Virus record (IMG/VR): IMGVR_UViG_3300027899_000001
Coordinates: 248,001 to 312,000 of that record
DNA: 64,000 nt
Direction: 5' to 3' (one strand)
A model generated the notes under the pieces. That model was not told the origin of the DNA and ran no database searches. It saw nothing but the letters and a program-made list of their open reading frames with translations. The translations under genes were made by a program, and so were the position numbers. This document shows, one piece after another, positions 11,683-35,386 of the stretch (its first letter is position 1; the number at the start of each line of letters is the position of its first letter).

Positions 11683-12384
11683 TTATACATTATATTTTAA
11701 AAAATCTTTTCGAGTTATACAGGCATTACCAGTTTCTATATAATGTTCAAGTAAATAAAATTGTTTTTCATATAAATGTAAACTTCCACTATTCCATATA
11801 ATTGCTCTTTTATTTATATGTAAATCATCACCCAATTTGTCTAAGATATATTTATGCCATGCGTAATCATTTCTATAGCCTGCCCATGCATCATTAGATC
11901 TCATTAACACATAAGAATATAAAATATTATTTCTAATCAAAAATTGAACAGCATAAGTACACATAAAATCATTTTTATTATTTTTATTATAATCTTCCCA
12001 CATAGTAGGACGATTATAAATCATTACACCTCGTCTTGAACTTTTTTGTTGTGTTAATTCTGTTAAACAATTTTTATATTGATAACCATTTTCTTTTGAA
12101 AAAACACACCAACCATAATTAGAATTTATAAATCCGCTTGGGTCTGCGACGTTTTTCCATATTGTAGGCGTATTTTTTATATCATTAACATTCAAAGATT
12201 GAGATAAATACCAATCAAGTTCATTTTTTACATATTCTTCATTAGTTTTTCCAAATATATATGATTCATCTGCTATAAATTGTGCACATATAAGATCAAT
12301 AACTTTTCCACCAAATTTATCAGTTTCAAATTTTTGTTCTTTATATTTTTTAACGAATTGATTTCTGATATCTTTTACTTTCAT
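11683..12384 (-). CDS. gp42: dCMP hydroxymethylase (T4 gp42-like, thymidylate synthase fold)
   Basis: 'INSNYGW', catalytic 'DFMCT', 'MRSND...GYRNDYAW', 'IIWNSGSLHLY' closely parallel T4 gp42 as recalled, including the dCMP-specifying Asp in RND. Confidence 0.85.
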   Translation of the reverse strand: MKVKDIRNQFVKKYKEQKFETDKFGGKVIDLICAQFIADESYIFGKTNEEYVKNELDWYLSQSLNVNDIKNTPTIWKNVADPSGFINSNYGWCVFSKENGYQYKNCLTELTQQKSSRRGVMIYNRPTMWEDYNKNNKNDFMCTYAVQFLIRNNILYSYVLMRSNDAWAGYRNDYAWHKYILDKLGDDLHINKRAIIWNSGSLHLYEKQFYLLEHYIETGNACITRKDFLKYNV

Positions 12385-12393
12385 AGTTTTTAT

Positions 12394-12603
12394 TTATTTT
12401 TTATATCTTTTATCTTTTAATAGTTTCACTGCATATGAAGATAGTTTTTCTAATTGAGATAAATTCATCTCATAGATAAACTCTTGAAGCATTTCAATTT
12501 CAAGAGACATTAAATATTCATTATCTTCTTTATCCTTTGGTTTCATTTTCTTTGTATATTTCCCAATCAAATCCAGAAAGATATTCTTCATATGTTTCTT
12601 CAT
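12394..12603 (-). CDS. Hypothetical protein (true start possibly downstream)
   Basis: ORF track; overlaps the neighbouring Zn-ribbon ORF. Confidence 0.4.
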   Translation of the reverse strand: MKKHMKNIFLDLIGKYTKKMKPKDKEDNEYLMSLEIEMLQEFIYEMNLSQLEKLSSYAVKLLKDKRYKK

Positions 12604-12730
12604 CTAAAACATAATCCCAATAATAATATGCATTTTTGCAATTCGGGCAATCTCCTGAATCGTAATCTTCAACTTCAAATATATAATTACAAATGGGACA
12701 AGTTAATTCATTCATTTTTTTATTCATCAT
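12530..12730 (-). CDS. Small Zn-ribbon protein
   Basis: CPIC...CPNC. Confidence 0.6.
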   Translation of the reverse strand: MMNKKMNELTCPICNYIFEVEDYDSGDCPNCKNAYYYWDYVLDEETYEEYLSGFDWEIYKENETKG

Positions 12731-13010
12731 GATAAACTATCCATGCAATATCATCACTATCAATTTTAAATGATCCGTCATCTTTTTCTCCATCAACTTC
12801 TGGAACTTCAGGAAGTTCTATTGGATAATCAAAACTAACTTTAGGATGAAAAGATCCATCTCCATCAGCATAAAATGCACAAAATCTTGAAGCTCCTGCA
12901 TTTCCAAGGCGTTCCATATATTTAAACATTTTCTTTAATGCTATTGCATCAGCAGGTCTAATATTATCAATAGTGATAACTAACTTATGTTCTTTTCTTT
13001 CTAGTGCCAT
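12720..13010 (-). CDS. Hypothetical protein
   Basis: 96 aa ORF in a tightly packed operon. Confidence 0.6.
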   Translation of the reverse strand: MALERKEHKLVITIDNIRPADAIALKKMFKYMERLGNAGASRFCAFYADGDGSFHPKVSFDYPIELPEVPEVDGEKDDGSFKIDSDDIAWIVYHDE

Positions 13011-13013
13011 ATT

Positions 13014-13268
13014 TTATTTGTGTAAATATTTTTTAACATTCATTTCATGAGCTACATTTCTTTCTACATCATAATCACTATGAATTACAATTGTATATGT
13101 TAACGCCCATATAAACCAATATAAAGTATAAGTTCTTGTAAGCCACCATCCTTGAACATTTTTCATGTAATCAAATTTTGGAAGCCATTTATTCCACTCA
13201 AAAGTGGGATAATCTTTAAATCCTATTGGCGCATACCAATATCTATAAAATTTCAACTTTCTTCTCAT
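13014..13268 (-). CDS. Hypothetical Trp/Tyr-rich protein
   Basis: 84 aa ORF. Confidence 0.5.
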   Translation of the reverse strand: MRRKLKFYRYWYAPIGFKDYPTFEWNKWLPKFDYMKNVQGWWLTRTYTLYWFIWALTYTIVIHSDYDVERNVAHEMNVKKYLHK

Positions 13269-13569
13269 TTTCTAAAGTATTATTTGTTTCATCTTGTTTT
13301 ACAGATGGCGAGCAATTAAGATACTCAAAAGCAAACATTTTACGAGTAAATTTTTTACTCCATCCAAAGTGTTTTGCTAATAAATTTACAGCCCATTCAT
13401 ACCATTCATCATGTTGAGCTTGAGTTACTTCATATTTTTTATAAAATGCTCGAAAATCTTTTTCACCCACCCATTCTTTTTCTACTTGAGCTATTGTTGT
13501 GTTATGATAAGGAACTAACCAACCATCTATTAAATCATCAAGAGTTGGCTCCTTTTTTCTTGTTCTCAT
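13243..13569 (-). CDS. Hypothetical protein
   Basis: 108 aa ORF with an ATGA overlap to the kinase. Confidence 0.55.
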   Translation of the reverse strand: MRTRKKEPTLDDLIDGWLVPYHNTTIAQVEKEWVGEKDFRAFYKKYEVTQAQHDEWYEWAVNLLAKHFGWSKKFTRKMFAFEYLNCSPSVKQDETNNTLENEKKVEIL

Positions 13570-14180
13570 TTTACAAATTGTATTACTTCTTTTAATATTT
13601 GTTTTTTAGATCTAAACGCAGTTTCTTCCATAACAACTACTTCATCTACTTTTAACATAAGTTTATTTTTTATTTTTGAAAAATCATGTGCTTCTTTAAA
13701 CAATTCAAGTTCTTTAGTTTTTTGTTCTAAATTTTGTGAAAAAGAATCGCCATCTTCTTTAAGTAAAAAGAAATAAGGATCTGCTGTTAAAGTAATAAGA
13801 TATATGTCAAATTTATTGTCAACATAAGGTAATTCAGTAATTTCCCAGTTCATTAATTTATTTTTCAAAAAATTACCATCTACGTTTCTAAACATTTGAC
13901 CATATACATATTCTCCTAAGTGTGATCTATTCCATATAATTATGTCTTCATAATAATTATATCTAGAATAGCAAAAAACATTTTTAATTTTATGAACTAA
14001 TTGAATTTCATTATCAAAACATTTAAATTGATAATCTAAAGTTTCTTCAACAGTCATGCCTTTAGGAGGTTTTCCAAAATGTCTTATTGTAATATTATTA
14101 TAATCAAACTTTTTACAAATACCTTCAATAAGAGTAGATTTACCAAGTCTATCTCCCCCCTCGATCACAATGAGTTTCAT
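13566..14180 (-). CDS. Deoxynucleoside monophosphate kinase (thymidylate-kinase-like P-loop)
   Basis: 'IVIEGGDRLGKST' P-loop; 'WNRSHLGEYVYG' DR-type motif. Confidence 0.8.
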   Translation of the reverse strand: MKLIVIEGGDRLGKSTLIEGICKKFDYNNITIRHFGKPPKGMTVEETLDYQFKCFDNEIQLVHKIKNVFCYSRYNYYEDIIIWNRSHLGEYVYGQMFRNVDGNFLKNKLMNWEITELPYVDNKFDIYLITLTADPYFFLLKEDGDSFSQNLEQKTKELELFKEAHDFSKIKNKLMLKVDEVVVMEETAFRSKKQILKEVIQFVK

Positions 14181-15069
14181 ATTTAATAAATTTTTTATTA
14201 TATCTTTCTGTAAATATTAATTTTTTATCTTCTATTAAATTTTTTATTTCTTCAAAAGATACTTGTTTTACACATTCAGTTAATTTATATTTAAAATTTT
14301 GTTGTTTACAAAATACCTCAGCGGCTTCTTTTTTTCTTGCAACTGTATCGCTATTCCATAATTTTTTAGGCTTAATTTCTATTAAAAATTTATCTTCAAT
14401 TAAAAAATCTGGATAATACGTTCTTTTGTTTCCGTTATAGTCAATATATTCAATTTTATATTTCTTTTTTTCAGCTCCTTCCCATTTTAAATTAAATCTT
14501 TCAATAACATATATCATATATGATAATTCTTTTAGAGATCTAAAAAACCACCCTTTATACCAACCACTCCAACCATTACCTGAACCCTGAGGAGAAGGCT
14601 TACCATACATATTATTTTTATCGCCTTTACGAGATTCACTATAATGTTGTCGTAATCGTTTACCTGTTTCTTCACCCCAGATTTGTTCAATGGTTTTTCC
14701 ATTTTGATCTAATGAGGCCCATCCATGCGAATATTTACCACCAAAATTTGCATTATTTTTTCCACTATTTGCTGTAGAATTTTTTTCTTTAGCAATAATA
14801 GCACCATCAATTCCTAAAATTTCTTCTAATGTTTTATTTTTTAAACTTTTATTATATTGAATTAATTTATTAGAATTTCGAATGCCTTCTTTATATTGCT
14901 GTTTATTCTTACAGCTTCTGCATAAATCTTTATAATATTTCTGAAATCCTAGTTGTTGATTTAATAAAGAAGAATCCCATATATTATCACATTCATCACA
15001 TTGAATTATTATTCGTTGTTTATTAGTTATTGTAGAATTTTTTAATTTAATTACTTCACTTAAAATCAT
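14149..15069 (-). mobile_element. Homing-endonuclease-like protein (Zn finger + NUMOD3-like repeats + TnsA-like PD-(D/E)xK nuclease)
   Basis: CDEC/CRSC; 'NNMYGK'; 'YYPDFLIEDKFLIEIKP'. Confidence 0.7.
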
Positions 15070-15094
15070 GTTTTATTCTATATATTCATAATTT

Positions 15095-15136
15095 TTATTC
15101 AACTCTATCTCCATCTTCAATAATTATTAATTTCAT
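15095..15136 (-). pseudogene. Stranded 5' remnant of the dNMP kinase gene (MKLIIIEDGDRVE*)
   Basis: Hand-translated; aligns with the kinase start MKLIVIEGGDRLG; ATGA-coupled to the upstream small ORF. Confidence 0.75.
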
Positions 15137-15276
15137 TTTTTCTCTTTAAGTAATTTTTCTAATTCTTTTTGTTGAGAATAATTAAGTGTATGTTTAGACT
15201 TTAAGTATAATAACCATGAAAATCTATCTTTTAATCCAGTGTCTCTTGCAAAAGATGCAGATTTAAGTATAGCCAT
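15133..15276 (-). CDS. Small hypothetical protein (47 aa)
   Basis: Hand-translated MAILKSASFARDTGLKDRFSW...KEKK*; its stop overlaps the remnant ATG. Confidence 0.45.
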   Translation of the reverse strand: MAILKSASFARDTGLKDRFSWLLYLKSKHTLNYSQQKELEKLLKEKK

Positions 15277-15397
15277 TATAATGAATTTTTAAGTATTTCA
15301 ATTAATTCATTTTTATCAATATATGTTCTTATATCTTGGGTATTCCAATATGCTTGTCCCTTATCTATTAATTCAGTACGCATTCCATTTATTAGAT

Positions 15398-15811
15398 TTA
15401 TAACTTCATCAAGTGTAAAAGTTTTTCACTTGATATAGTTAACGGTTCATTAACTGTTTCTTCTGAATTTATTGTAGGCGGGTGAGTCATATATATTCCA
15501 TATTTATCAACTAATTTAAGAAAAGCATCTTCAATACAGTTTGAATCTAATGTTCCATTTTTTAAATTAACTAAAGTAGAATATGTACTACTATCTAAAT
15601 TAGTATATCCTTGTTGACTAAATGACGCATGAGTTCCTGGCATTCCAGGAGGACCTTGAATTCCTGTCATTCCCGGTTGACCCACAGGTCCTACACTTCC
15701 TGAAATTCCTTCAGTTAATAAACTTGCTCTTACGTAATTTTTCATCCATTGTTCTTTTTTATCATCAATTGCATTAGTTTTTAATCTCGGTTCAATACTT
15801 GTATATCCCAT
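15398..15811 (-). CDS. Hypothetical protein with a short collagen-like (G-X-Y)n tract
   Basis: GISGSVGPVGQPGMTGIQGPPGMPG. Confidence 0.6.
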   Translation of the reverse strand: MGYTSIEPRLKTNAIDDKKEQWMKNYVRASLLTEGISGSVGPVGQPGMTGIQGPPGMPGTHASFSQQGYTNLDSSTYSTLVNLKNGTLDSNCIEDAFLKLVDKYGIYMTHPPTINSEETVNEPLTISSEKLLHLMKL

Positions 15812-17022
15812 TAGAATAAAGATTTTGATTTATTATTTAATTCTTTTGTATTATCCTGCATATAAACAGATTGAGTAGATAATGTACGATTACCTTTTAT
15901 TATTTCAACTATTTCTCGAGTTACATCCTCACATGTGCAAACTGGAACATTTTGAGTTATTTTAGGATATTCCTTTATACTTTCAAGTTCATAATCATGA
16001 GGTAATCCCATCAGGTGCATATATTCTCTTATATTAATAAGTCTATCCTCTGAAGGATGAAGTGTTCTATTCATCATCTCAGATATCACCGCGTACACAT
16101 AATCTCTATCTAATCCAAGAACACGATATCCAAGTCTAAAATTTTTACCCATCTCAGTCTTTTTAATAACATGAGCAGTATTCTTTTTAACTATATTAGA
16201 CGCGTTCGGTAAAGTTTCAAGAAAATCTTTAAAATCATATAATAATCCCTGTCGTTTAAGATAATCGTATGAAGTTAAATGAGTTTTATATGTTTTATAA
16301 ATTTCATTTTTCCAATCAGTTCCATATATTTTTTTAAAGAATTTTGTTATTTCATATTCATTTACATCTGAATCTTCATTCATATATTTATCTTGATAAC
16401 TTGCTCTTTTAGGTATATCTTTTAAATATTTAGAAATATTTGGCATCGGTCTATTATATGAATGTAATATAGGAGCGTATTTACCTTTTAGAAATATTGC
16501 AAATGTACGAGGACGAAATTGGGGAATTCCGTGCTTTATCGTATTTGTTTTATAAAATGTAACTGCATAATCATTTGCTTCAGCAATTTTAATAAGATTA
16601 TTTCTTACATCTTCTCCACTGCCTGTATAAAGGCCCGGAGCATTTTCAAATGCATAAATAGTTGGACTTAAAAAATCTAAGATAAAGACTGCTGATTTAT
16701 ACATCCATTCATTTGGTTCTGCAGTTCCTCTTGAACCCTTAGGACGTTGTGCAGCTTGAGATAATCCAGAACAAGGTGGAACTGCTGTGACAAAATCAAG
16801 ATTTTTAGAAAATTCTTGTAGTTTATGAACTTCGTTATCATTCATATTATCTAATTGAATATAAGGCACATCGTGTCCTTTTTTCAAAAGATATCTTCTC
16901 AATAAATCGTCATTAGCTTTAAAAGGAGTATAGGATGTAATTGCCAGAGGAGGGCTTCCTATTATATTCATATTTCCAAGAGCAAAACCTCCAGCAAGAG
17001 GTATATGTGCTATGTAACGCAT
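15811..17022 (-). CDS. DNA cytosine-C5 methyltransferase homolog with a divergent motif I
   Basis: Motif IV 'PPCSGLS', VI 'ENAPG', VIII 'GIPQFRPRTF', IX 'RLINIREYMHLMGLP', X 'QNVP'. Motif I reads 'IPLAGG' instead of FxGxGG. Confidence 0.75.
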   Translation of the reverse strand: MRYIAHIPLAGGFALGNMNIIGSPPLAITSYTPFKANDDLLRRYLLKKGHDVPYIQLDNMNDNEVHKLQEFSKNLDFVTAVPPCSGLSQAAQRPKGSRGTAEPNEWMYKSAVFILDFLSPTIYAFENAPGLYTGSGEDVRNNLIKIAEANDYAVTFYKTNTIKHGIPQFRPRTFAIFLKGKYAPILHSYNRPMPNISKYLKDIPKRASYQDKYMNEDSDVNEYEITKFFKKIYGTDWKNEIYKTYKTHLTSYDYLKRQGLLYDFKDFLETLPNASNIVKKNTAHVIKKTEMGKNFRLGYRVLGLDRDYVYAVISEMMNRTLHPSEDRLINIREYMHLMGLPHDYELESIKEYPKITQNVPVCTCEDVTREIVEIIKGNRTLSTQSVYMQDNTKELNNKSKSLF

Positions 17023-17084
17023 GTTAAAATATTTAATATAGTTTAATTATTATACCTTTAAAGAGATTAAAAGTTTTAATTTAT

Positions 17085-17116
17085 TAAAAAAAGAGACGCC
17101 CCTCGTAAGGAGCGTC
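17085..17116 (-). terminator. Rho-independent terminator with a UACG tetraloop
   Basis: Minus strand GACGCTCCT-TACG-AGGGGCGTC followed by TCTTTTTTT. Confidence 0.75.
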
Positions 17117-17146
17117 AGGCCAAAGATTCTATCTTTGGGGATGCAA

Positions 17147-17829: not shown

Positions 17830-17843
17830 TTCTAAAAATAATT

Positions 17844-18251: not shown

Positions 18252-18263
18252 ATTATAGTTTAT

Positions 18264-18274: not shown

Positions 18275-18278
18275 ATAA

Positions 18279-19946: not shown

Positions 19947-20966
19947 ATGAAAGAATTCAAAAAAGAAAAGAATTTATTTATATGTGAAGAATGCCAACGC
20001 ACATTTGTTAAAATCGATGGGTTAAGTAAACATATAAGACTTAATCACTATTCTCAAAAAACATATTATGATAAATGGCTAAAAGAAAATGATGAAAATA
20101 CTTGTAAAATTTGTAAAAAAGAAACAACATTTATAGGATTAGGAAAAGGTTATAAAAATTGTTGTTCATCTGACTGCACTAAAAAATTTAGAACACATAA
20201 AATTCAAGCAACTTTATTACTTAGATATGGTGTAAATTCTCCTACTAAAGATAAAACTATTAGAGAAAAAGTAAATAAAACGATGATAAAAAAATATGGG
20301 CATAAATGCCCTATGAAAAATGAAAAAATACAAAAAGAAATAAAACAAAATAATTTAAAAAAATTGGAAGTAGAATATCCATTTCAGTCTTTAAAAATTC
20401 AAGAAAAAATAATTATATCTAATTTAGAAAATTTCGGAGTAAAAAATACGTTTCAACGAATAGATGTAAAAAATAAAATAAAAGAAACTTGTATGCAAAG
20501 ATATGGAGTTGAAAATCCAAATAATAATAAAAAAGTTAGAGATAAAATAGAAAAAACTTGTATAGATAAATATGGAGTTAAAAATCCATCACAGAATAAA
20601 GAAGTGCATGATAAACAACAAAAAAACGCGTGTTATTCAAAAAAATATAAAAATACTATTATAAACTATAGAGCATCTTATGAATATGATTTTTTAGAAA
20701 AATTTTACCCAGTATATTCTGATATAGTTAATGGCCCAACAATAAAATATCAATATAAAAATGAATCCAGATTATATTTTCCAGATTTTTACATTCCATC
20801 TTTAAATCTTATCGTTGAAATAAAAAATTCTTATCTTTTAAAAAAAGATAAAGAAAAAATAGAAGCAAAGAAAAAATATACTATTCTTAATGGGTATAAT
20901 TATTTAATAATTACTAATAAAGATTATTCTACATTTTCTTCATATCTTAAAATTTCTCCAGTATAA
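19947..20966 (+). mobile_element. Homing-endonuclease-like protein (C2H2 finger, YGV.NP repeats, C-terminal PD-(D/E)xK nuclease)
   Basis: 'FICEECQR...HIRLNH'; repeated 'YGVxNP'; 'YFPDFYIPSLNLIVEIK'. Confidence 0.7.
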
Positions 20967-22099
20967 CTTTTAAATTCATATACATGATCTTTATGCGATA
21001 TAATGTTATCACAGACTTCAATTTTTCCTAAATGAGAATCTACAATAAATGTTGGACACGCGTAACCACTCGTCCAGCCTCTCAATGCTGAGATAATCTG
21101 AAGTCCTTTATTAATAGTAGTTCTAAAATGACTTGTACCTGCAACAAGATCGCATGCATATATATAATATGGTCTAACTCTAATTGTAAGAAGACTATTC
21201 ATAAGCTTTTTCATAATTTGTGGGTCATCGTTAACGCCTTTGAGTAATACTGTTTGAGAACCTAAAGGAATTCCTGCATTCGCAAGCTTTTCACACGCTT
21301 GTTTAACTTCTGAAGTTATTTCATCGGGATGAGAGAAATGAATACTTATGAATAAAGGATGATATTTCTTTAAGATATTAGTTAACTCTGGCGTAATTCT
21401 TTGAGGTAACACAACAGGAACTTTAGTTCCAATTCTTAAGAACTCAACGTGTTTTATTTCTTTAATTTCTTTAAGAAGATATTCTATACTATCGTCATTC
21501 ATAGTTAAAGGATCTCCTCCAGATAATAACACATCTCGTATCTCAGTATGTTCTCTAATATACTGAAGCGCCTTTTCCCACGCTTTCTTAGGAATTCGTT
21601 CTCTATTTATGAGTCTACTTCTTGTACAGTATCGACAATTTGAAGAACAAAAGTCCGTGGTTAGAAATAATACACGATCTGGATATCTATGAACTATACA
21701 TTCCACAGGACTTTGATGTTCTTCGTTCAGCGAGTCGTTTTTCTCATTTTCAGTTACGTGAAGTTCGTTATTGGTTGGAATAACGCACTTTCCGATTCCT
21801 TCTGAAAGAGAAGTGATTGTACTTGCATAATATGGAGTAATTCTTAATGGTAAATTTATATTCTTGGATAATTCATAATTTGAATCTCCAAATATACGAC
21901 TCAATTCTTCATATGTAGTTATACTGTTACGTATCTGCCAATGCCAATCATTCCAATTAGTATCAGATACATCTGAATAAAATCTATTTTTAAAAGATTG
22001 AGTTTTTTCGGAGATGATAAGAGGGGGTTCTTCAGTATCAACGATAATCTCCTGAGCTGGTTGATACTGGTTTTTAGACGAATCTATTTGTTGTTCCAT
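20924..22099 (-). CDS. kamA: KamA-family radical SAM lysine 2,3-aminomutase
   Basis: 'WNDWHWQIRN', 'VHRYPDRVLF...CSSNCRYCTR', 'LLSGGDPL', PLP-Lys 'LLKGVND', 'VRPYY'. Confidence 0.85.
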   Translation of the reverse strand: MEQQIDSSKNQYQPAQEIIVDTEEPPLIISEKTQSFKNRFYSDVSDTNWNDWHWQIRNSITTYEELSRIFGDSNYELSKNINLPLRITPYYASTITSLSEGIGKCVIPTNNELHVTENEKNDSLNEEHQSPVECIVHRYPDRVLFLTTDFCSSNCRYCTRSRLINRERIPKKAWEKALQYIREHTEIRDVLLSGGDPLTMNDDSIEYLLKEIKEIKHVEFLRIGTKVPVVLPQRITPELTNILKKYHPLFISIHFSHPDEITSEVKQACEKLANAGIPLGSQTVLLKGVNDDPQIMKKLMNSLLTIRVRPYYIYACDLVAGTSHFRTTINKGLQIISALRGWTSGYACPTFIVDSHLGKIEVCDNIISHKDHVYEFKSYTGEILRYEENVE

Positions 22100-23126: not shown

Positions 23127-23816
23127 TTGGAAATCATGAATCATCAAAAAGTCTATGAATCTATAATTCAGAGAGCAAAATCTGAAAATAGAATTAAACT
23201 TAATAGAAATAATGAAAATTATATTTATTATGAAAATCATCATATTTTGCCCAAATGCTTAGGTGGAAATAATGATAAAGATAATTTGGTTTTATTAACA
23301 GCAAAGGAACATTATGTCTGTCATAAATTACTTACATATATTTATAAAGAAAACGCAAAAATATACGGTGCTTTTTTCTATATGTCATTTAATAAAAAAT
23401 ATGACAAATTTTTATCAGCTCGAGATTATGCTTACGCAATAGAATTAAATACTATCGCACATATTAATAAAAAACAATCGTTAGAAACAAAAGAAAAAAG
23501 AAGAAAATCAATGTTAGGTAAAAACAAAGGAAAAAAAATGAAAAAAGAATTTGGCGAAAACATTTCTAAACGTTTAAAAGGAAACATTCCTTGGAATAAA
23601 GGAAAACCCGGGTGTTTTTCAAATGATACTATTAATAAAATGTCAATAGCTGCAATAGGAGTAAAAAATTCATTAGAATCAAATGAAAAAAATAGGCAAT
23701 CTCATATAGGAAAAACTACATGGAATAAAGGATTAACAAAAGAAATTGATGAACGGGTTTTAAAATGTTCACTTAAAATTTCTAAAACTCTTAAAAATAA
23801 AAATTTATTAAATTAA
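23127..23816 (+). mobile_element. Free-standing HNH homing endonuclease
   Basis: 'YYENHHILPKCLGGNNDKDNLVLLTAKEHYVCHKLL'; paralog of 9287-9934; 'PWNKG' repeats. Confidence 0.8.
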
Positions 23817-24517
23817 GACTGGCCCGGACCCTTTATAGCAATTCCGCTAATTGCAGGGTTGGATCTATCATTAGGTTGCGAAAATTGTTTTACCCTATTC
23901 GCATCAGTTATATCGGCAGCATTTTGCTGAAGACCTATACTCTCTTCAACTTCTCCTTTGGCTGCTACTGCTTTACCATCTGTAACTTTATTAAGTTCTT
24001 CTGGAGCCATTGTTCCAAATCCTGAACGTTCTTCCCAATAATCTTTTCCATAATCAATTGTAAGTTGTTCTCCAGCTTTTATAGTTCTTGCTGCGATAAA
24101 ATACATTTGACGATTATCTTTATTATAAGCAAATGTGATATTTGGTTGAGGTGAATGCCCATATAAACTGCCATATCCAAGCACAATACCGTATTGCATT
24201 TTATTTTTATCGATTTCAAAAATATAATCTTTTAATCTTGGAACTGCTTTTGCTTCAAGACCCACAAAAATAATAGGCGCAATTTCAACTATTTCTCCTT
24301 TAGCATATTGTGTTTTAGCTAACACAAGATATCCTCCATTCTTTTTCTTAGAATATTCTACACGATTAACATTGAACACTTCTTTACGCGCTGTCAAGAA
24401 ACCCCCTTTATCAGCAATATGTGAAGGTTTTACTACGATATCTGTTTTTTCAAACGGATTGTAAAATTCTTCATCTAGTTTAGCAAATTGATCAAATGTT
24501 TTAATTTTATATTTCAT
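23813..24517 (-). CDS. SET-domain protein methyltransferase
   Basis: 'KNGGYLVLAK...KGEIVE', 'GSLYGHSPQPN' (NHS-like), 'AARTIKAGEQLTIDYG'. Confidence 0.8.
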   Translation of the reverse strand: MKYKIKTFDQFAKLDEEFYNPFEKTDIVVKPSHIADKGGFLTARKEVFNVNRVEYSKKKNGGYLVLAKTQYAKGEIVEIAPIIFVGLEAKAVPRLKDYIFEIDKNKMQYGIVLGYGSLYGHSPQPNITFAYNKDNRQMYFIAARTIKAGEQLTIDYGKDYWEERSGFGTMAPEELNKVTDGKAVAAKGEVEESIGLQQNAADITDANRVKQFSQPNDRSNPAISGIAIKGPGQS

Positions 24518-24538
24518 GATTGAATTAATTTTTTATAT

Positions 24539-25264: not shown

Positions 25265-25281
25265 ATCTATTTTTATATGAA

Positions 25282-25893: not shown

Positions 25894-25909
25894 TATTAAA
25901 ATTATTTTA

Positions 25910-26899
25910 TTATGCTAATTTACCTGTTTGTTCACCTTCTACTTTAGTTTCATCTGTGAGAGGCCCTTCAAATGATTTAGCATATTTAATATCGCATTGA
26001 TTGTTTTCTTTTTCTCCAACTATCTTATATGTTATTAATTTATCATCAACACTAACTATTACTACTTCTTTTTCTCCTATGCCTTTAATATTAATTTTAT
26101 ATTTTTTTCCAACTTCAAGTTTAGGAGTTTGTTTTTCTGTTTGTGCTTCTTCTTGATCTTTTTGTATTTTAGCCTTTTGTTCTTCTGTTTGTGTAGTAGT
26201 TTCTTGAATTTTCTCATCGTTGTATCTATTAGCATAAGAACTTTCATCATAAAGTTTGTAGGCTTCTTCATTAGTCAATACTTTTCTTGCATCAGCTTCA
26301 ATAGTTTTTGAAATGTATGAATATGCATTCATTTGAATTTGTGTATGTAATAATTGCCAATAATTTTTTAATTTAAGAGCAGCAGCATCTTTTCCACCTT
26401 TAAAAAATGCAGCTGTTGCATCTAATATTCCTGTTATAGTTGATGATGTTTCTGCATTACTAATTTTTTTATCAAAAGCAGCATCTGCATTAGATAAAAA
26501 TTTATCTACTGCGCCATAAATAGCATCTAATTGTCTTTTTTGTAAATTCGATGTCGTTTTAATTTTATTATTTAAAATTTTCTTTAATTCTTCGCCTTTT
26601 TTATTTTCTTTAATAGCTTCTGCTAAAGCAGTAGTTACACTTCTTTCTAATTTTAATACATTAGGAAGATATTTATTTATTATTTTTTCTGTTACTTGGT
26701 CTTGAGTTCTTTTTGCAGTTTTATTTAAAGTTCTTTTAATTCTACCCCATTTTGTAAAAAGGTTTCCTTTTTCTGTTTCGACATCTTCAGGTTTTCCTGC
26801 AATTGTTTCATTGGCTTCATTTAAACCCAATTCTTTAAATAAACTATTTCCATTTATATCAACAACTTCAGAAAGTTGTAAGTATTCACTATATTTCAT
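25910..26899 (-). CDS. Hypothetical helical protein with a capsid-targeting-like leader
   Basis: MKYSEYLQLSE...GLNE; 329 aa. Confidence 0.6.
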   Translation of the reverse strand: MKYSEYLQLSEVVDINGNSLFKELGLNEANETIAGKPEDVETEKGNLFTKWGRIKRTLNKTAKRTQDQVTEKIINKYLPNVLKLERSVTTALAEAIKENKKGEELKKILNNKIKTTSNLQKRQLDAIYGAVDKFLSNADAAFDKKISNAETSSTITGILDATAAFFKGGKDAAALKLKNYWQLLHTQIQMNAYSYISKTIEADARKVLTNEEAYKLYDESSYANRYNDEKIQETTTQTEEQKAKIQKDQEEAQTEKQTPKLEVGKKYKINIKGIGEKEVVIVSVDDKLITYKIVGEKENNQCDIKYAKSFEGPLTDETKVEGEQTGKLA

Positions 26900-26946
26900 A
26901 ATCTTCTTACTTTTATTTTTATATATATTCTAGTACAAAAAGCTTT

Positions 26947-26957
26947 GAATATATAAA
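26947..26957 (+). promoter_or_regulatory. Putative late promoter motif GAATATATAAA (divergent pair with the variant at ~26918-26930)
   Basis: Exact 11-mer 17 nt upstream of the ATG at 26974. Confidence 0.5.
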
Positions 26958-26973
26958 ATAAAATATTACTACT

Positions 26974-28281
26974 ATGAAACATGTATATGAATCTTTAAAA
27001 GAATTTAATGATTATAAATTCTTCAAACTTTTAGAAGAAAAAGAAGAACCTGGTACTGATAAGCAAAATCTACAATCTAAAGAAAAAGATGGTTTAGCTA
27101 TTATAGATAAGGTCATAAAGAATTTTGATGACTTTAAAAAAGATGCTAAAGGTGAAATTCTTAAGTATAAAGAATTCTGGGAAGAAAATCAGCAAACTAA
27201 AAAGGCATTTTCTAATGGAGATGTCTATAAAATGTATGATGGTAATTACGTTGTAGGTGTTCTTGAATTACCAGTAGAAACATTATCTGATGGTAGTATA
27301 GAAGGTGGATTAGGAGCAACAGATGAACCAGTAGAAGAGATTATTGAAGGCAAAGAATTAATGGAAGCTACAAAAGAAGAAGACGATTTAGGTCTTGATC
27401 TTGGTTTAACAGATGAACCCATAACAGAACCTAATACTAGTCCTGCTCCAAATGAAGTTCCAGCAGATCCTAATACACAAGAATTAGAAGAGCCTGCTCC
27501 TGATCAATCGGGAAATTCAGGATTAACTGATCAATCTCCAGTAGAAGAACCTCCAATGGATCAAGCACCAGTTGAAGAACCTTCGCCAGATCTTACAGCG
27601 CCCCAAACATATTTAGTAGTATATGACATGTCAGGTGATGATAAAGAAGAAATTTTTAGATGTGGTTCTAATAATGTAGTTCAAGGATTTCAAGCATTCT
27701 ATAATGACACTTTTAAAGGATCAATGAAAAATGCTATATTACAATATAAGAAACAAAAAGAACAAGAAAAAGCTGAAGCTGAAAAAACAGAGAAGAAAAA
27801 AGTTCAAGCTGAAAAACAAACTAAAGTTCAAAAATTCTTAGGTGAAGCTCTTGAAGAAGATATGCCAGAAGATGATGAAATGCAGTCTTGGCTTGATGAA
27901 GTAAGAGATTATCTTATATCTGAATATGAAATTGAAGAAGATGTAGTAGATGATTTCTTAGAATTAGCTTCTGAACAATTAGCTGATTTATTTGATGGAG
28001 GATCAAGTGCATTTGATGCAGCTGGAACAGTTGCTACAGATGAAGATATTTTATCAGAACTTGATAAAGATGATGAAGACGAAGATGATATTGACATAGA
28101 AGATGAAGATGAATTAGATGATGAAGATCTTGAGGATCTTGGTGAAGAAGAAGATGAAGAAGAATATCCTGAAGATGAAGATGATGAAGAAGATGATGAC
28201 GATACACATGAAGAAGAATTAGGAAAAATAATTGGAAGAGATACAATGAGACGTCCATTACGTTTATCAGATGAAGATTAA
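26974..28281 (+). CDS. Highly acidic low-complexity protein
   Basis: 435 aa; Pro/Glu-rich middle, D/E-saturated C-terminus; leader MKHVYESLKEF. Confidence 0.7.
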   Translation: MKHVYESLKEFNDYKFFKLLEEKEEPGTDKQNLQSKEKDGLAIIDKVIKNFDDFKKDAKGEILKYKEFWEENQQTKKAFSNGDVYKMYDGNYVVGVLELPVETLSDGSIEGGLGATDEPVEEIIEGKELMEATKEEDDLGLDLGLTDEPITEPNTSPAPNEVPADPNTQELEEPAPDQSGNSGLTDQSPVEEPPMDQAPVEEPSPDLTAPQTYLVVYDMSGDDKEEIFRCGSNNVVQGFQAFYNDTFKGSMKNAILQYKKQKEQEKAEAEKTEKKKVQAEKQTKVQKFLGEALEEDMPEDDEMQSWLDEVRDYLISEYEIEEDVVDDFLELASEQLADLFDGGSSAFDAAGTVATDEDILSELDKDDEDEDDIDIEDEDELDDEDLEDLGEEEDEEEYPEDEDDEEDDDDTHEEELGKIIGRDTMRRPLRLSDED

Positions 28282-28300
28282 TAAAATATAAAATTTAAAA

Positions 28301-28324
28301 CAAAGGGAACTTCGGTTCCCTTTG
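28301..28324 (+). terminator. Rho-independent terminator with a cUUCGg loop
   Basis: CAAAGGGAAC-TTCG-GTTCCCTTTG. Confidence 0.8.
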
Positions 28325-28370
28325 TTATTTAACAAAACTTTAACAAGATATCAGCGTATAATATAAAATA

Positions 28371-28385
28371 TTTGTTTATATTTAC
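28371..28385 (+). promoter_or_regulatory. Putative early/middle promoter element TTTGTTTATATTTAC
   Basis: Identical 15-mer upstream of the phosphoesterase at 63675-63689 (-). Confidence 0.45.
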
Positions 28386-28396
28386 AATAAAATTTT

Positions 28397-29203
28397 ATGA
28401 GCAAACACTTTGACGAAATTATCATAATTGGTCTTGAGAGGTGTCAAAACAGAATTGACATGGTTGAATCTCAACTTAAAAATTTTAATCTTCCCTATCG
28501 TATCTTTCCCGCATTTGATGGACAGCAAATAGCAAATCCGTCAATGAAAACAATGACACGTGCTCCTCTTAAAGCATTTTCTAATTTTAATCCCAGTAGA
28601 CCTAAATATCTTCCGGGTATGTTATGTTGTGGGTTATCTCATATAGCAGCAATGAAACATGCTCAGATGATGAATCTTAAAGGAATACTTTTACTTGAAG
28701 ATGATGTCATATTATCTCCTGATTTTGCAGATAGATTAAAATTGATTGAAGAAGTTCCAGACGATGCAGATTTAATTTATATTGGAGCTATTGTGACAAG
28801 CGATCATTTAAGTAAGAAATATAAAATATCTGAACATGTATGGGATGCTCAGAAAATGAGTCTTTACGCAACTCATTCCTTTATAGTCACGCGTAAAGGA
28901 TATACACCAGTTATTAAAAAAATGATGGAATGCGAAGATACATGCGATTCATTATTAGTTGAAGGTGTTCAAAAACAGGAAATTAAAGCATATGCAGTAA
29001 TTCCATTTTGTACATATCAAATAGAAGGAACATCAGAAATTGATGGTAAAAAGAAATCATTAAATCATACAAAAACTTTATATTCTCCGGATGAAAATTT
29101 TAGTAACATGGGAGGCTATGATCGTAAAACTAAAATGAATGTTAATGATATAACAAGTGAATATAGCTACGAAAAAAGTGCAAAACCTAAATCTTTATTC
29201 TAA
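28397..29203 (+). CDS. Glycosyltransferase, GT25-like
   Basis: 'IIGLER...R', 'AFDG', 'LCCGLSH', 'LLLEDD'; ends KPKSLF. Confidence 0.75.
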   Translation: MSKHFDEIIIIGLERCQNRIDMVESQLKNFNLPYRIFPAFDGQQIANPSMKTMTRAPLKAFSNFNPSRPKYLPGMLCCGLSHIAAMKHAQMMNLKGILLLEDDVILSPDFADRLKLIEEVPDDADLIYIGAIVTSDHLSKKYKISEHVWDAQKMSLYATHSFIVTRKGYTPVIKKMMECEDTCDSLLVEGVQKQEIKAYAVIPFCTYQIEGTSEIDGKKKSLNHTKTLYSPDENFSNMGGYDRKTKMNVNDITSEYSYEKSAKPKSLF

Positions 29204-29337
29204 TGAACGAAAACAAATGTCCAAAACATGAATTAGTCTTCGTAAGAAATATCTACGAAGACAAAAAAAGTGAATGGAAATGTTCTAAATGTGGAAAAAC
29301 AAAATATAAAAAATATCTTAATAAAAGAGAAAAATGA
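29203..29337 (+). CDS. Small Zn-ribbon protein (44 aa)
   Basis: Hand-translated MNENKCPKH...WKCSKCGK...*; overlaps both neighbours. Confidence 0.45.
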   Translation: MNENKCPKHELVFVRNIYEDKKSEWKCSKCGKTKYKKYLNKREK

Positions 29338-29561
29338 ATGCACAAGAATATATCGATTATCTTAAAGATTTTGCTGAAAAAATAGATGATGAAACTCTTA
29401 AATCAGTAGGAATTAAATCTATTGCAATTATACAAGAAGTTCTTGCAAAAGATCCAATGAAACCAAAATTATTGGTAAAAAAATTAGATGAAACACAATA
29501 TAGTGTATATGGTAGAGATGAAATTTTAACAGAATTGAACAGAATATTTAGAGACGTATGA
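29334..29561 (+). CDS. Hypothetical protein
   Basis: 75 aa ORF. Confidence 0.55.
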   Translation: MNAQEYIDYLKDFAEKIDDETLKSVGIKSIAIIQEVLAKDPMKPKLLVKKLDETQYSVYGRDEILTELNRIFRDV

Positions 29562-30802
29562 AAATAGCTTTAGTAATGGGAAGAGGCGCAGAAGGCGCCG
29601 GAATTCAACGATATGTTATTGAATTATCGACATTTTTATCTAAAAAACAAATTGAACATATTATCTATATCATGGATGATAAAAAATGGGGACGTGGAGG
29701 ATTTCAAACATTTCCTCAAAAACCATCTATGATTACAAAAGATAACATTGATAATTTTTCAGATGTATTGAATAAATTTGATTATGTGTTTATCAATAGT
29801 GTTCCAAGTATTAAACATTCAGAATGGGCTATTGATGGATTTCTTAAAATGGTCAAGGGTATAAAAACCAAAAAGATTATATTTCAAAATGATCATAAAA
29901 TAGCTTCTATTCATAGAAATGCTAATTTTATTGAGATGTGTGGTCTTTGTGATGGTATAGTATCTCATAGTATTACATCTCCTTTCTATAATAAACTTGT
30001 AGATGTATATGGAGGCGCTGTTAGATCTAAATTTATTCAACTTCAAGTAGGATTTAATTTCTCTCAGTTAGCAAAATATCGTAAAGAAGATCATGTTAAA
30101 AAAATTACATATCTTGGTAGATATGCTACATTTAAACAACCTGACAGATTATTTGCTTTTCTTCCTTATGCTAAAGATAATGATATATTACTTGAAATGA
30201 AAGGTGTTGAAAGATCACTTGGCGCTTTGAATATCTTTTATGATGATATCGAAAATAAAATTCCCAAACATGATATCATTCAGGTTGATAAAAATTTCTT
30301 TAAAACTGGAATGTCAGCTTTAGATGCTGATAGAAGTTATGAACATGTTTATATATATGGTCCTTATGATTATGTAGATGGAATGGAAACATTAAGCAAA
30401 TCATTAGTAGGCGCAGATTTTTATCATCTTAATGCAGATGCATATGGAGATAATTTTGAATATGCTCAATGTGAAATAATTGGAGTAGGAACAGTTCCTA
30501 TGTTTGATTATCATTGGGCAGAAAATTGTTACATATATGAAAATGGTAAGAAAACTGATAAAAGATTTGTAGAACTTGATACTTATGGACTTTTTGTTAA
30601 AAAAGATTTAACAAATGTAAAGGAAATAGTAGAAAAAATTAACAATATATATTCTGATAAGAAACTTCATAAACAATATTTAGATTGTAGTTTTGAAGTT
30701 ACACGAAATCATTGTGATAGTGAATTTATATTTCAAAATCTTATAGATGGTATTTCAGGATTAGAAAAAGCAAAACAAATAAAAACTAAACCCTTATTTT
30801 AA
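29558..30802 (+). CDS. agt: DNA alpha-glucosyltransferase, T4 AGT-like
   Basis: 'MGRGAEGAGI', 'INSVP', 'NDH...S.HRN', 'SHS', 'GRYATFK', 'GVERS', 'EYAQCE...GTVP.F' parallel T4 AGT as recalled; ends KTKPLF. Confidence 0.8.
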   Translation: MKIALVMGRGAEGAGIQRYVIELSTFLSKKQIEHIIYIMDDKKWGRGGFQTFPQKPSMITKDNIDNFSDVLNKFDYVFINSVPSIKHSEWAIDGFLKMVKGIKTKKIIFQNDHKIASIHRNANFIEMCGLCDGIVSHSITSPFYNKLVDVYGGAVRSKFIQLQVGFNFSQLAKYRKEDHVKKITYLGRYATFKQPDRLFAFLPYAKDNDILLEMKGVERSLGALNIFYDDIENKIPKHDIIQVDKNFFKTGMSALDADRSYEHVYIYGPYDYVDGMETLSKSLVGADFYHLNADAYGDNFEYAQCEIIGVGTVPMFDYHWAENCYIYENGKKTDKRFVELDTYGLFVKKDLTNVKEIVEKINNIYSDKKLHKQYLDCSFEVTRNHCDSEFIFQNLIDGISGLEKAKQIKTKPLF

Positions 30803-35383: not shown

Positions 35384-35386
35384 AAT

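What the first reader, a model, noticed from the sequence alone, without database searches (positions are those of the whole stretch)
11683..30802. T4-type hydroxymethylcytosine + glucosylation pathway in a non-T-even jumbo-type phage
Seen: gp42-like enzyme (11683-12384), dNMP kinase (13566-14180) and AGT-like transferase (29558-30802). Established: in T-even phages these give alpha-glucosyl-hmC DNA that resists restriction. Inference: this genome is hmC-substituted and glycosylated, possibly with a sugar other than glucose, given the adjacent nucleotide-sugar island.
Basis: partly seen in the sequence, partly recalled or inferred. Interest (0 to 1): 0.65.

Follow-up and report, generated by a model that had tools for sequence, protein, structure and literature searches.

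The report
Glycosylated hydroxymethylcytosine pathway in jumbo phage
A 405 kb freshwater jumbo phage carries genes that should build hydroxymethylcytosine into its DNA and attach sugar to it, as phage T4 does, but it lacks T4's helper genes and adds an unexplained, widely conserved cytosine-methylase-like partner.

Summary
The gp42-like ORF is a T4-type 5-hydroxymethyl-dCMP synthase: 52.6% identical to T4 gp42, and it carries all four diagnostic residues, which separate it from thymidylate synthase and from RB69-type 5-hydroxy-dCMP synthases. The AGT-like ORF belongs to the T4 alpha-glucosyltransferase family: its nine best PDB fold matches are all T4 AGT. The "dNMP kinase" is a thymidylate-kinase-like nucleotide kinase, not a T4 gp1 homolog; the same type sits beside the TS homolog in the RB69, DLP3 and RL38JI clusters.

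The genome is complete (405 kb) and only distantly T4-like. I found no gp56/MazG-type dCTPase, DenA, DenB, Alc, beta-GT or TET. Complete replacement of cytosine is therefore not shown.

The AGT-like gene always travels with a small ORF and a GT25 glycosyltransferase. The nucleotide-sugar genes downstream form a variable cassette.

A distinct C5-methyltransferase-like gene lies between the kinase and the AGT-like gene. Across IMG/VR this subfamily is tightly linked to cytosine-type TS homologs: all 33 TS neighbours found carry Asp. Its role is unexplained.

Verdict: a new variant of a known kind of pathway. No chemical evidence is available, and the sugar is unknown.

The parts
11683..12384 (-). 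T4-type dCMP hydroxymethylase (5hm-dCMP synthase), gp42-like, 233 aa
   Evidence: PDB 1B49/1B5D E=3e-73 over the full length. 52.6% identical to T4 gp42 and 20% to RB69 gp48. Residues at E. coli ThyA positions L143/C146/D169/N177 are D/C/D/D, the same as T4. Falls in the T4-type clade, 100/99 support.
13566..14180 (-). Thymidylate-kinase-like nucleotide kinase, presumed 5hm-dCMP kinase, 204 aa
   Evidence: Pfam Thymidylate_kin 29.7 bits. Family profile against PDB: TMPK E=1e-5. 56% identical ortholog lies beside the TS homolog and the MTase-like gene in L022/L024/L026. TMPK-like kinases sit beside the TS homolog in the DLP3, RB69 and RL38JI clusters.
15811..17022 (-). C5-pyrimidine methyltransferase-like protein of a distinct phage subfamily, 403 aa; role unknown
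   Evidence: Pfam DNA_methylase 80.8 bits. Motifs I, IV (PC), VI (ENAP), VIII (QxRxR), IX and X are conserved across 21 homologs. In 20 of 21 distant AGT-like loci. All 33 TS genes found within 8 kb of 80 homologs are Asp-type. No TET association.
29558..30802 (+). AGT-family (T4 alpha-glucosyltransferase-like, GT-B) DNA glycosyltransferase candidate, 414 aa
   Evidence: Pfam AGT 44.4 bits; phrog_2888 E=3.8e-62; T4 AGT E=1.6e-18. AF2 model: nine best PDB matches are all T4 AGT, TM 0.80-0.89. G15, D115, H116, H140, R204, E306 and E311 are kept; H114 is Asn.
32001..32282 (+). Small conserved ORF (93 aa) that always accompanies the AGT-like gene
   Evidence: Present in 29 of 31 close-clade loci, and in L076. 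No family assigned.
32299..33018 (+). GT25-family (GT-A) glycosyltransferase; fixed partner of the AGT-like gene; candidate second-sugar transferase
   Evidence: Pfam Glyco_transf_25 E=1.1e-11. Present at 61-74% identity in 29 of 31 close-clade loci.
28397..29203 (+). Second GT25-family glycosyltransferase just upstream of the AGT-like gene
   Evidence: Pfam Glyco_transf_25 E=5.7e-14; phrog_2835 'glucosyltransferase'. Close orthologs (56-60%) in 3 relatives.
33670..56270 (+). Glycan island. Frequent glycosyltransferases: GT2 33670-34449, GT10 FucT 42198-43064, GT25 43841-44512. Variable NDP-sugar tailoring genes: DegT 38134-39240, 2,3-dehydratase 39921-41234, GFO/MocA 41247-42185, C-methyltransferase 45615-46910, Gmd 48544-49608, GT8 and GT47, several methyltransferases. 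The acceptor (DNA or virion) is undecided.
   Evidence: Pfam and NCBIfam hits; Gmd scores 464 bits against a 415-bit equivalog cut-off. The GTs recur in 10-13 relatives, whereas the biosynthesis genes recur in 0-2. The island is bracketed by a gp23 paralog (30804-31730) and the gp23 major capsid gene (56803-58575).
11011..11676 (-). GIY-YIG/NUMOD3 homing-endonuclease-like ORF abutting the gp42-like gene
   Evidence: Pfam SegE_GIY-YIG and NUMOD3. It may relate to the exchange of TS-homolog lineages seen in this clade. This is inference only.

Best explanation
The region encodes a pre-replicative cytosine hypermodification pathway. The gp42-like enzyme converts dCMP to 5-hydroxymethyl-dCMP. The adjacent thymidylate-kinase-like kinase phosphorylates it, and a cellular NDP kinase presumably completes 5hm-dCTP. 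The phage polymerase then incorporates hmC. After replication, the AGT-family enzyme transfers a hexose-type sugar from an NDP-sugar to the hydroxymethyl group, and the invariably linked GT25 enzyme probably extends it. Shown: family membership, catalytic and specificity residues, the AGT fold, and conserved gene linkage. Inferred: the kinase's substrate, DNA as the acceptor, the second sugar, and every chemical outcome. Unlike T4, the genome has no recognisable dCTPase and no cytosine-DNA nucleases, so replacement of C may be incomplete. A conserved C5-methyltransferase-like enzyme belongs to the same module and may act on the remaining cytosines.
For: gp42-like: E=3e-73 to T4 dCMP hydroxymethylase. 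Diagnostic residues are D/C/D/D as in T4. The RB69 5ho-dCMP synthase control gives E/C/N/D and ThyA gives L/C/D/N (criteria from PMC13326640). A separate canonical ThyA exists in the genome. AGT-like: Pfam, PHROG and PDB sequence hits. The fold search returns T4 AGT as hits 1-9, about 14 orders of magnitude ahead of generic GT4 enzymes. NDP- and ribose-binding residues are kept. Linkage: close-clade records that reach far enough upstream carry an Asp-type TS plus the MTase-like gene (G016, G013, G001, G003-5). 19 of 21 distant non-T-even AGT-like loci have an Asp-type TS within 10 kb. Two different cytosine-type TS lineages fill the same slot within the clade, which argues that the function, not the particular gene, is selected. 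Kinase: TMPK-like kinases sit beside the TS homolog in the characterised DLP3, RB69 and RL38JI clusters. A T4-like dCMP deaminase is present, 44% identical. No TET was found, so hmC cannot arise post-replicatively by the known route.
Against: There is no chemical or read-level evidence. The only public run holding this DNA is the probable source metagenome, kept as contigs. No gp56, MazG, PRA-PH or MazG-like dCTPase was found, although T-even controls score 109-121 bits. No DenA, DenB, Alc, beta-GT or Arn was found. A C5-methyltransferase would have no substrate in fully hmC-substituted DNA. The AGT-like gene heads a + strand block of glycan genes flanked by capsid genes, 17 kb from the gp42-like gene on the opposite strand. 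One relative, G006 (a 129 kb fragment), has AGT-like + GT25 but no Asp-type TS or MTase-like gene in the sequenced part.
Confidence: 0.7

Rival explanations
1. Mixed-mark genome. Without a dCTPase the phage incorporates both dC and hm-dC. hmC is glycosylated, and the conserved C5-methyltransferase-like enzyme methylates residual cytosines in its target motif. This gives two layers of protection rather than T4-style total replacement.
For: No dCTPase-like family is present in a complete genome, and the positive controls work. The MTase-like protein keeps all catalytic and AdoMet-type motifs. It is linked to Asp-type TS genes in 33 of 33 cases within 8 kb, and in 3 of 3 further near-complete genomes elsewhere in the genome. 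T-even-type loci, which do have gp56, lack it.
Against: Some module carriers do have a gp56-family gene (phage G, G019), so MTase presence does not simply track dCTPase absence. A motif-specific MTase cannot cover all residual cytosines. The Dut-like ORF or an unrecognised enzyme might deplete dCTP.
Confidence: 0.3
2. One reading: the AGT-like enzyme uses an unusual phage-made NDP-sugar from the adjacent island, so the DNA carries a non-glucose sugar or a longer glycan.
For: In distant loci the AGT-like gene directly abuts nucleotidyltransferase or epimerase/dehydratase genes, often with overlapping stop and start codons. Phage G has a G1P-thymidylyltransferase between its two AGT-like genes. 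The glucose-contacting His114 is Asn here. DNA-bound di- and trisaccharides of varied sugars are documented (10.1101/2023.12.21.572611; PMC13326640).
Against: This window's NDP-sugar biosynthesis genes are not conserved with the AGT-like gene: 0-2 of 31 relatives for each. Two of the three glucose contacts and the NDP contacts are T4-like. I found no sugar-1-phosphate nucleotidyltransferase among the island ORFs scanned. Gmd and 2,3-dehydratase chemistry implies GDP- or dTDP-sugars. Eight or more glycosyltransferases is far more than any known DNA glycan needs.
Confidence: 0.25
3. The AGT-like enzyme and the GT island glycosylate virion proteins or another non-DNA acceptor. hmC, if made at all, stays unglycosylated.
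For: The AGT-like gene is co-oriented with the glycan island and immediately followed by a gp23 paralog. The island ends at the major capsid gene. The island is variable, like surface-glycan loci. Virion glycosylation by phage GTs is known (cited in PMC12619734).
Against: The fold and sequence match T4 AGT specifically, far ahead of generic GT4 enzymes. The AGT family is strongly linked to cytosine-type TS genes across unrelated phages.
Confidence: 0.12
4. The gp42-like enzyme makes a different C5 product, either 5-hydroxy-dCMP as in RB69 or 5-methyl-dCMP as in Xp12.
For: TS homologs with Asp at the N177 position are now known to yield three different products (PMC13326640; 10.1101/2024.12.05.627091).
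Against: Asp is kept at the D169 position, whereas 5ho-dCMP synthases have Asn (the RB69 control confirms this). The L143 position is acidic, the hydroxymethylase state. The protein is 52.6% identical to T4 gp42 and 20% to RB69 gp48, and it lies in the T4-type clade.
Confidence: 0.03

Closest known systems
Phage T4 glucosyl-hmC system (gp42, gp1, gp56, alpha-GT, beta-GT, DenA/DenB, Alc)
   Same: The first enzyme is the same type, with all diagnostic residues. The AGT family and fold are the same. A dCMP deaminase homolog is present.
   Different: No gp56 dCTPase, gp1, beta-GT, DenA, DenB, Alc or Arn was detected. The kinase is TMPK-like. A C5-methyltransferase-like gene and a GT25 partner are added. 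The host genome is a 405 kb freshwater jumbo phage whose core genes are 22-29% identical to T4.
RB69 / DLP3 / RL38JI glycosylated 5-hydroxycytosine clusters (PMC13326640)
   Same: The architecture matches: a TS homolog next to a TMPK-like nucleotide kinase, plus glycosyltransferases and NDP-sugar genes.
   Different: Those TS homologs carry Asn at the D169 position and make 5ho-dCMP; this one keeps Asp. Those genomes encode a dCTPase. Their GTs are GT4-like arabinosyl or galactosyl transferases, not AGT-type.
ThyS-associated GT-B gene clusters mined from IMG/VR (Pyle et al., 10.1101/2023.12.21.572611)
   Same: A GT-B glycosyltransferase near a thymidylate-synthase homolog, read as pre-replicative hypermodification. 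That study also notes methyltransferases, secondary GTs, epimerases and structural genes nearby.
   Different: That study tested MT/5mYOX-dependent clusters, not this AGT/TS/MTase-like module. As far as I could read, it does not report the specific linkage of this MTase-like subfamily to Asp-type TS homologs.
Uncharacterised modules in Bacillus phage G and TIM5-like cyanophages
   Same: Phage G has two AGT-like genes, a C5-MTase-like gene sharing the PC-S-G-L-S motif IV, an Asp-type TS and a sugar nucleotidyltransferase within about 17 kb. S-TIM54 has ThyA-like, a hypothetical gene and a 'DNA methylase' adjacent to one another.
   Different: Sequence identity is only 23-31%. Those phages have no GT25 partner and no large glycan island. 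No DNA chemistry is reported for these phages in the papers I could read.
Phage C5-MT + TET/5mYOX + GT post-replicative pathway (PMC8256090)
   Same: A C5-methyltransferase-family gene and DNA glycosyltransferases occur in one cluster.
   Different: No TET/JBP in this genome, nor in 42 records carrying this MTase-like subfamily. hmC here comes from a nucleotide-level TS homolog.

Membership tests
T4-type 5-hydroxymethyl-dCMP synthase (gp42) | Full-length homology to T4 gp42 and placement in its clade | tested here: met
   E=3e-73 over residues 1-229 against 1B49. 52.6% identity. T4-type clade of 19 rows with 100/99 support.
T4-type 5-hydroxymethyl-dCMP synthase (gp42) | Catalytic Cys (E. coli ThyA C146 / T4 C148) | tested here: met
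   Cys is present in the F-M-C-T motif.
T4-type 5-hydroxymethyl-dCMP synthase (gp42) | Asp at the N177 position (T4 D179), which gives dCMP specificity | tested here: met
   Asp in the R-N-D-Y motif. Canonical ThyAs in the same alignment have Asn.
T4-type 5-hydroxymethyl-dCMP synthase (gp42) | Acidic residue at the L143 position, which admits water and gives a hydroxymethyl product | tested here: met
   Asp, as in T4; ThyA has Leu. Criterion from PMC13326640.
T4-type 5-hydroxymethyl-dCMP synthase (gp42) | Produces 5hm-dCMP from dCMP | not testable with these tools
   Needs expression followed by LC-MS.
5-hydroxy-dCMP synthase (RB69 gp48 type) | Asn at the D169 position | tested here: not met
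   The window protein has Asp; the RB69 gp48 control has Asn. Criterion.
DNA alpha-glucosyltransferase family (T4 AGT, Pfam PF11440) | Family profile above the curated cut-off, with end-to-end alignment | tested here: met
   44.4 bits against 25. phrog_2888 E=3.8e-62 over residues 1-397. T4 AGT residues 1-399 aligned.
DNA alpha-glucosyltransferase family (T4 AGT, Pfam PF11440) | AGT-specific GT-B fold, distinct from generic GT4 | tested here: met
   AF2 pLDDT 87. PDB hits 1-9 are all T4 AGT (TM 0.80-0.89, E 1e-25 to 1e-22). The next hits are GT4 enzymes at E about 1e-11 and TM 0.60 or less.
DNA alpha-glucosyltransferase family (T4 AGT, Pfam PF11440) | NDP and ribose contacts (G15, R204, E311) | tested here: met
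   All are conserved, and invariant in 20 homologs. Residue list from PMC6024577.
DNA alpha-glucosyltransferase family (T4 AGT, Pfam PF11440) | Glucose contacts (H114, H116, H140) | tested here: inconclusive
   H116 and H140 are kept; H114 is Asn. This fits glucose or a related hexose equally.
DNA alpha-glucosyltransferase family (T4 AGT, Pfam PF11440) | Acceptor is hmC in duplex DNA | not testable with these tools
   Supported only by gene linkage to Asp-type TS homologs.
T4 gp1 dNMP kinase | Homology to gp1 (phrog_139 / PDB 1DEK) | tested here: not met
   Only the P-loop matches, E=0.007. No tblastn hit. 1DEK is absent from the PDB hits.
Thymidylate kinase-like nucleotide kinases | Family profile, P-loop and central motif | tested here: met
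   Pfam 29.7 bits against 27. Profile against TMPK structures E=1e-5 over positions 2-179. The EG-D-GK-S/T P-loop and the N-R-x-H-x-G-E motif are invariant in 4 homologs.
Complete T4-style cytosine replacement system | dCTPase (gp56 or MazG-like) | tested here: not met
   phrog_173, PF03819, PF01503 and PF12643 give no hit at E<=0.1 in the complete genome. T-even controls score 109-121 bits. Only a Dut-like ORF is present.
Complete T4-style cytosine replacement system | Cytosine-DNA nucleases and transcription block (DenA, DenB, Alc) | tested here: not met
   phrog_1111 and phrog_1360 give no hit. Alc was tested by tblastn only and gave no hit.
DNA C5-cytosine methyltransferase | Conserved motifs I, IV (PC), VI (ENV-like), VIII (QxRxR), IX and X | tested here: met
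   Pfam 80.8 bits. The motifs are conserved in 21 homologs, with variant forms PC-(A/S)-G-L-S and E-N-A-P. Substrate and activity were not tested.
C5-MT + TET/5mYOX post-replicative hmC pathway | TET/JBP dioxygenase in the genome | tested here: not met
   PF12851 gives no hit in the genome. 0 of 42 records carrying the MTase-like subfamily score above the cut-off.

The most novel reading that the evidence does not exclude
The conserved C5-methyltransferase-like subfamily (motif IV PC-(A/S)-G-L-S, motif VI E-N-A-P) may not be an ordinary protective methylase. It could be an obligatory partner of nucleotide-level cytosine C5 modification. For example, it might act on hmC-containing DNA through the covalent C6-Cys intermediate to derivatise or edit the 5-substituent. 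Alternatively it might mark residual cytosines so that a phage nuclease or packaging system can tell phage DNA from host DNA. Either role would define a new step in phage cytosine hypermodification, present in hundreds of environmental phages including S-TIM5-like cyanophages and Bacillus phage G.
Probability: 0.12. Interest if true: 0.8.

Novelty: new variant of a known kind. Interest (0 to 1): 0.55.

Why it matters
Glycosylated hmC is the textbook phage counter-defence, but it has been characterised almost only in T-even coliphages. This locus shows that a true T4-type hydroxymethylase and a true AGT-family transferase operate in a very different setting: a 405 kb freshwater jumbo phage without the T4 machinery that removes dCTP and destroys cytosine DNA. 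Here the two genes are combined with a GT25 partner, a TMPK-like kinase and a methyltransferase-like enzyme. The same methyltransferase-like subfamily has at least 593 matching stretches in IMG/VR. Every TS-family gene I found beside it is of the cytosine type, and I found no paper describing this link. It gives a concrete, cloneable set of genes for three tests: whether hmC replacement can be partial, what the methylase-like enzyme does on hmC-containing DNA, and which sugars AGT-family enzymes can put on DNA. The answers matter for restriction and CRISPR evasion, for detecting modified phage genomes in metagenomes, and for enzyme tools used in hmC mapping.

Tried and rejected
1. Nucleotide similarity to known phages: megablast of 20 kb found nothing.
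2. Read-level evidence for modification: the only public holder is one freshwater metagenome, probably the source and kept as contigs. I did not use read laying, because contigs cannot report base modification.
3. Restriction-site avoidance as a proxy for unprotected DNA: C-containing palindromes show no general depletion (median O/E 1.0). GGATCC stands at 15 observed against 62 expected. The T4 control itself avoids GATC, so the test cannot discriminate.
4. T4 late-promoter motif TATAAATA, to time the AGT-like operon: 28 observed against 28.5 expected by chance, and none upstream of the operon or the MCP.
5. A hidden oxygenase or sugar enzyme among the conserved unknown ORFs 26974-28281 and 25910-26899: the protein atlas gave no usable hit.
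6. My first idea that the gp42-like gene was recently acquired from a T-even phage. I rejected it because the T4-type clade contains many non-T-even environmental contigs, and the window's protein forms its own subclade beside T4's branch.
7. Whether the MTase-like gene is the TET-coupled C5-MT: no TET in the genome or in 42 related records.
8. Whether the lineage equals the published 'moraphages': those reach at most 307 kb and no TS homolog is mentioned. Not established.
9. I did not run the large protein-representative search, because the family scans settled the identities.

Full report
**Setting**

The window is bases 248001-312000 of a 405,016 bp IMG/VR virus record with direct terminal repeats, rated 100% complete. 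It is about 27-29% GC. The only public run holding this DNA is a freshwater metagenome. The genome has a T4-like core: gp23, gp17, gp41, gp43, gp46/47, UvsX, gp32 and gp61. These are only 22-29% identical to T4. It is therefore a distant T4-core jumbo phage, not a T-even.

**The observation**

- **11683-12384(-):** matches T4 dCMP hydroxymethylase structures at E=3e-73 over the full length.
- **29558-30802(+):** matches Pfam AGT above the cut-off and phrog_2888 at 3.8e-62, and aligns end to end with T4 AGT at E=1.6e-18.
- **13566-14180(-):** is only weakly but consistently thymidylate-kinase-like (Pfam 29.7 bits; a family profile hits TMPK structures at E=1e-5). It is not a T4 gp1 homolog.

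**What the TS homolog makes**

This question needed care. A 2026 study shows that RB69's 'gp42' makes 5-hydroxy-dCMP, and it gives diagnostic residues (PMC13326640):

- catalytic C146
- N177D, giving dCMP specificity
- acidic L143, giving a hydroxymethyl product
- D169 kept in hydroxymethylases, but Asn in 5-hydroxy-dCMP synthases

In my alignment the window protein reads D/C/D/D, identical to T4. The RB69 gp48 control reads E/C/N/D, and canonical ThyAs read L/C/D/N. The window protein is 52.6% identical to T4 gp42 and 20% to RB69 gp48. A maximum-likelihood tree places it in the T4-type clade (19 rows, 100/99 support). That clade also holds many non-T-even environmental contigs. The window protein forms its own subclade with three relatives, beside T4's branch rather than inside it. 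The genome also has a separate canonical ThyA. I conclude that this is a 5hm-dCMP synthase, short of an enzyme assay.

**The transferase**

An AlphaFold model built from 20 homologs (pLDDT 87, pTM 0.86) has T4 AGT as its nine best PDB matches (TM 0.80-0.89, E 1e-25 to 1e-22). Generic GT4 enzymes follow only at E about 1e-11 and TM 0.6 or less.

Using the functional residues listed in PMC6024577, G15, R204 and E311 (NDP and ribose contacts), D115, H116, H140 and E306 are conserved. The glucose contact H114 is Asn. The closest named relative is Bacillus phage G gp306, at 27.7%.

**What is missing**

tblastn with 37 T4 proteins found gp42, a-gt, cd (dCMP deaminase, 44%) and core replication genes. 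It found no gp56, gp1, DenA, DenB, Alc, beta-GT, Arn or Ndd.

Profile searches of the complete genome were also negative for:

- the gp56 family (phrog_173), MazG, PRA-PH and MazG-like
- DenA and DenB
- TET/JBP

The same gp56 profile scores 109-121 bits in T-even-type genomes, so the method works. The only candidate nucleotide hydrolase is a Dut-like ORF next to the polymerase. T4-style total replacement of cytosine is therefore not demonstrated. An unrecognised dCTPase cannot be excluded.

**Conservation in relatives**

IMG/VR holds 31 loci with the AGT-like protein at 60-81% identity.

- **Fixed core:** AGT-like, a 93-aa ORF and a GT25 glycosyltransferase co-occur in 29-31 of the 31 loci.
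- **Frequent companions:** GT2, a GT10 fucosyltransferase and another GT25, in 10-13 loci.
- **Patchy:** the NDP-sugar biosynthesis genes of this window (DegT, 2,3-dehydratase, GFO/MocA, C-methyltransferase, Gmd, GT8, GT47) occur in 0-2 loci.

That part of the island is thus a variable cassette. It lies between a gp23 paralog and the major capsid gene.

Records that reach far enough upstream carry an Asp-type TS homolog and the methyltransferase-like gene: G016, G013, G001 and G003-5. The exception is G006, a 129 kb fragment.

The TS slot is filled by two different lineages: T4-type in this genome, G013 and G001, and a MilA-like type in G003-5. Both carry the cytosine and hydroxymethyl signatures.

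**A wider module**

Using a divergent AGT alignment, I examined 21 distant non-T-even AGT-like loci, including phage G. Of these, 19 have an Asp-type TS homolog within 10 kb, and 20 have a C5-methyltransferase-like gene, usually directly downstream of the AGT-like gene. None of the 13 loci L073-L085 (mostly T-even-type) has the methyltransferase-like gene.

In these loci the AGT-like gene often abuts sugar-activating genes: a cytidylyltransferase-like gene and an epimerase/dehydratase in L055, and NTP-transferases in L064 and L065. Phage G has a G1P-thymidylyltransferase.

**The methyltransferase-like gene (15811-17022)**

It keeps every catalytic motif of C5-methyltransferases, in a distinctive form. 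It belongs to a subfamily with at least 593 matching stretches in IMG/VR.

In the best 80 loci, 33 have a TS-family gene within 8 kb, and all 33 carry Asp at the N177 position. None is a canonical ThyA. Ten have an AGT-like gene and 14 have the TMPK-like kinase.

Three further near-complete jumbo genomes (360-389 kb) carrying this gene also have an Asp-type TS homolog elsewhere in the genome.

The subfamily is not TET-associated: 0 of 42 records score above the cut-off. Cultured carriers include TIM5-like cyanophages and a Pseudoalteromonas phage. I found no DNA chemistry reported for them and no paper describing this linkage, within a library that is incomplete.

A C5-methylase has no substrate in fully hmC-substituted DNA. 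So either replacement is partial, or the enzyme does something else. This is the main unexplained point.

**Comparison with what is known**

Glycosyltransferases next to TS homologs are already recognised as a widespread class of pre-replicative hypermodification clusters in IMG/VR (Pyle et al.). TMPK-like kinases beside the TS homolog occur in the characterised RB69, DLP3 and RL38JI clusters.

The finding is therefore a new variant of a known kind: T4-type chemistry at both ends, in a non-T-even jumbo phage, without dCTPase or nucleases, and with GT25 and methyltransferase-like partners.

**Verdict**

- **Observation:** confirmed.
- **Interpretation:** partly supported.
- **Confidence that the locus makes glycosylated hmC DNA:** about 0.7.
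- **Still open:** the extent of replacement, the identity of the sugar, and the role of the methyltransferase-like gene.

**Procedural notes**

I took no step that needed referral.

Noticed in passing
window 20924-22099 (-): A KamA-family radical SAM amino-acid 2,3-aminomutase. It scores 341 bits on TIGR00238, above the cut-off. Lysine 2,3-aminomutase scores 412 bits, below the equivalog cut-off. This is unusual in a phage. It is conserved at 69-71% in three relatives (L015, L028, L048). Its role is unknown, and a link to DNA or glycan modification is not excluded.
   Followed up: partly
window 23813-24517 (-): A SET-domain (lysine methyltransferase-type) protein lies between the methylase-like gene and the AGT-like gene. 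It is conserved at 61-76% in 11 relatives, and a weak homolog occurs in L064.
   Followed up: partly
window 9287-9934, 11011-11676, 14149-15069, 19947-20966, 23127-23816, 47805-48566: A dense scatter of homing-endonuclease-like ORFs (GIY-YIG, NUMOD3, HNH, TnsA-like/DUF7487). One abuts the gp42-like gene and one overlaps the kinase gene's start.
   Followed up: no
window 30804-31730 (+): A short gp23 paralog (308 aa, Pfam Gp23 77.7 bits) starts two bases after the AGT-like stop codon. It also follows the AGT-like gene in six relatives. It may be a gp24-like vertex or decoration protein.
   Followed up: partly
genome G000:C1 142068-143219 and 93378-93977 (outside the window): The T4 gp43-like DNA polymerase matches in two pieces about 49 kb apart (residues 106-509 and 557-752). 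This suggests a split polymerase gene.
   Followed up: no
whole genome: GGATCC is the most depleted 6-bp palindrome, 15 observed against 62 expected under a maximal-order Markov model. CTAG is at 0.54. This may reflect restriction pressure from the host.
   Followed up: partly
L022/L024/L026 versus window, L040 (G001), L087 (G013): Within one phage clade, the cytosine-type TS slot is occupied by two lineages that are only about 27-32% identical: T4-type and MilA-like. This looks like non-orthologous replacement of the first pathway enzyme.
   Followed up: yes
IMG/VR loci L089-L168; genomes G044, G059, G062: The C5-methyltransferase-like subfamily is abundant (at least 593 stretches) and common in 360-390 kb jumbo genomes. 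Every TS-family gene found within 8 kb of it (33 of 33) has the cytosine-specifying Asp.
   Followed up: yes
window 48544-49608 and 38134-46910 (+): The island encodes a bona fide GDP-mannose 4,6-dehydratase (464 bits against a 415-bit cut-off). It also encodes an NDP-hexose 2,3-dehydratase, a GFO/MocA reductase, a DegT aminotransferase, a sugar C-methyltransferase and a radical SAM/SPASM protein. Together these form a toolkit for deoxy-, amino- and methyl-branched sugars.
   Followed up: partly
G059:C1:9064-9579 (locus L181): The T4-type TS homolog of this 389 kb record, which IMG/VR classes as a provirus, contains one in-frame TGA within the match.
   Followed up: no
window 10322-10984 (-): A von Willebrand factor A-like protein (VWA; borderline, 23.3 bits against a 23.8-bit cut-off) lies just downstream of the gp42-like gene and the homing-endonuclease ORF.
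   Followed up: no
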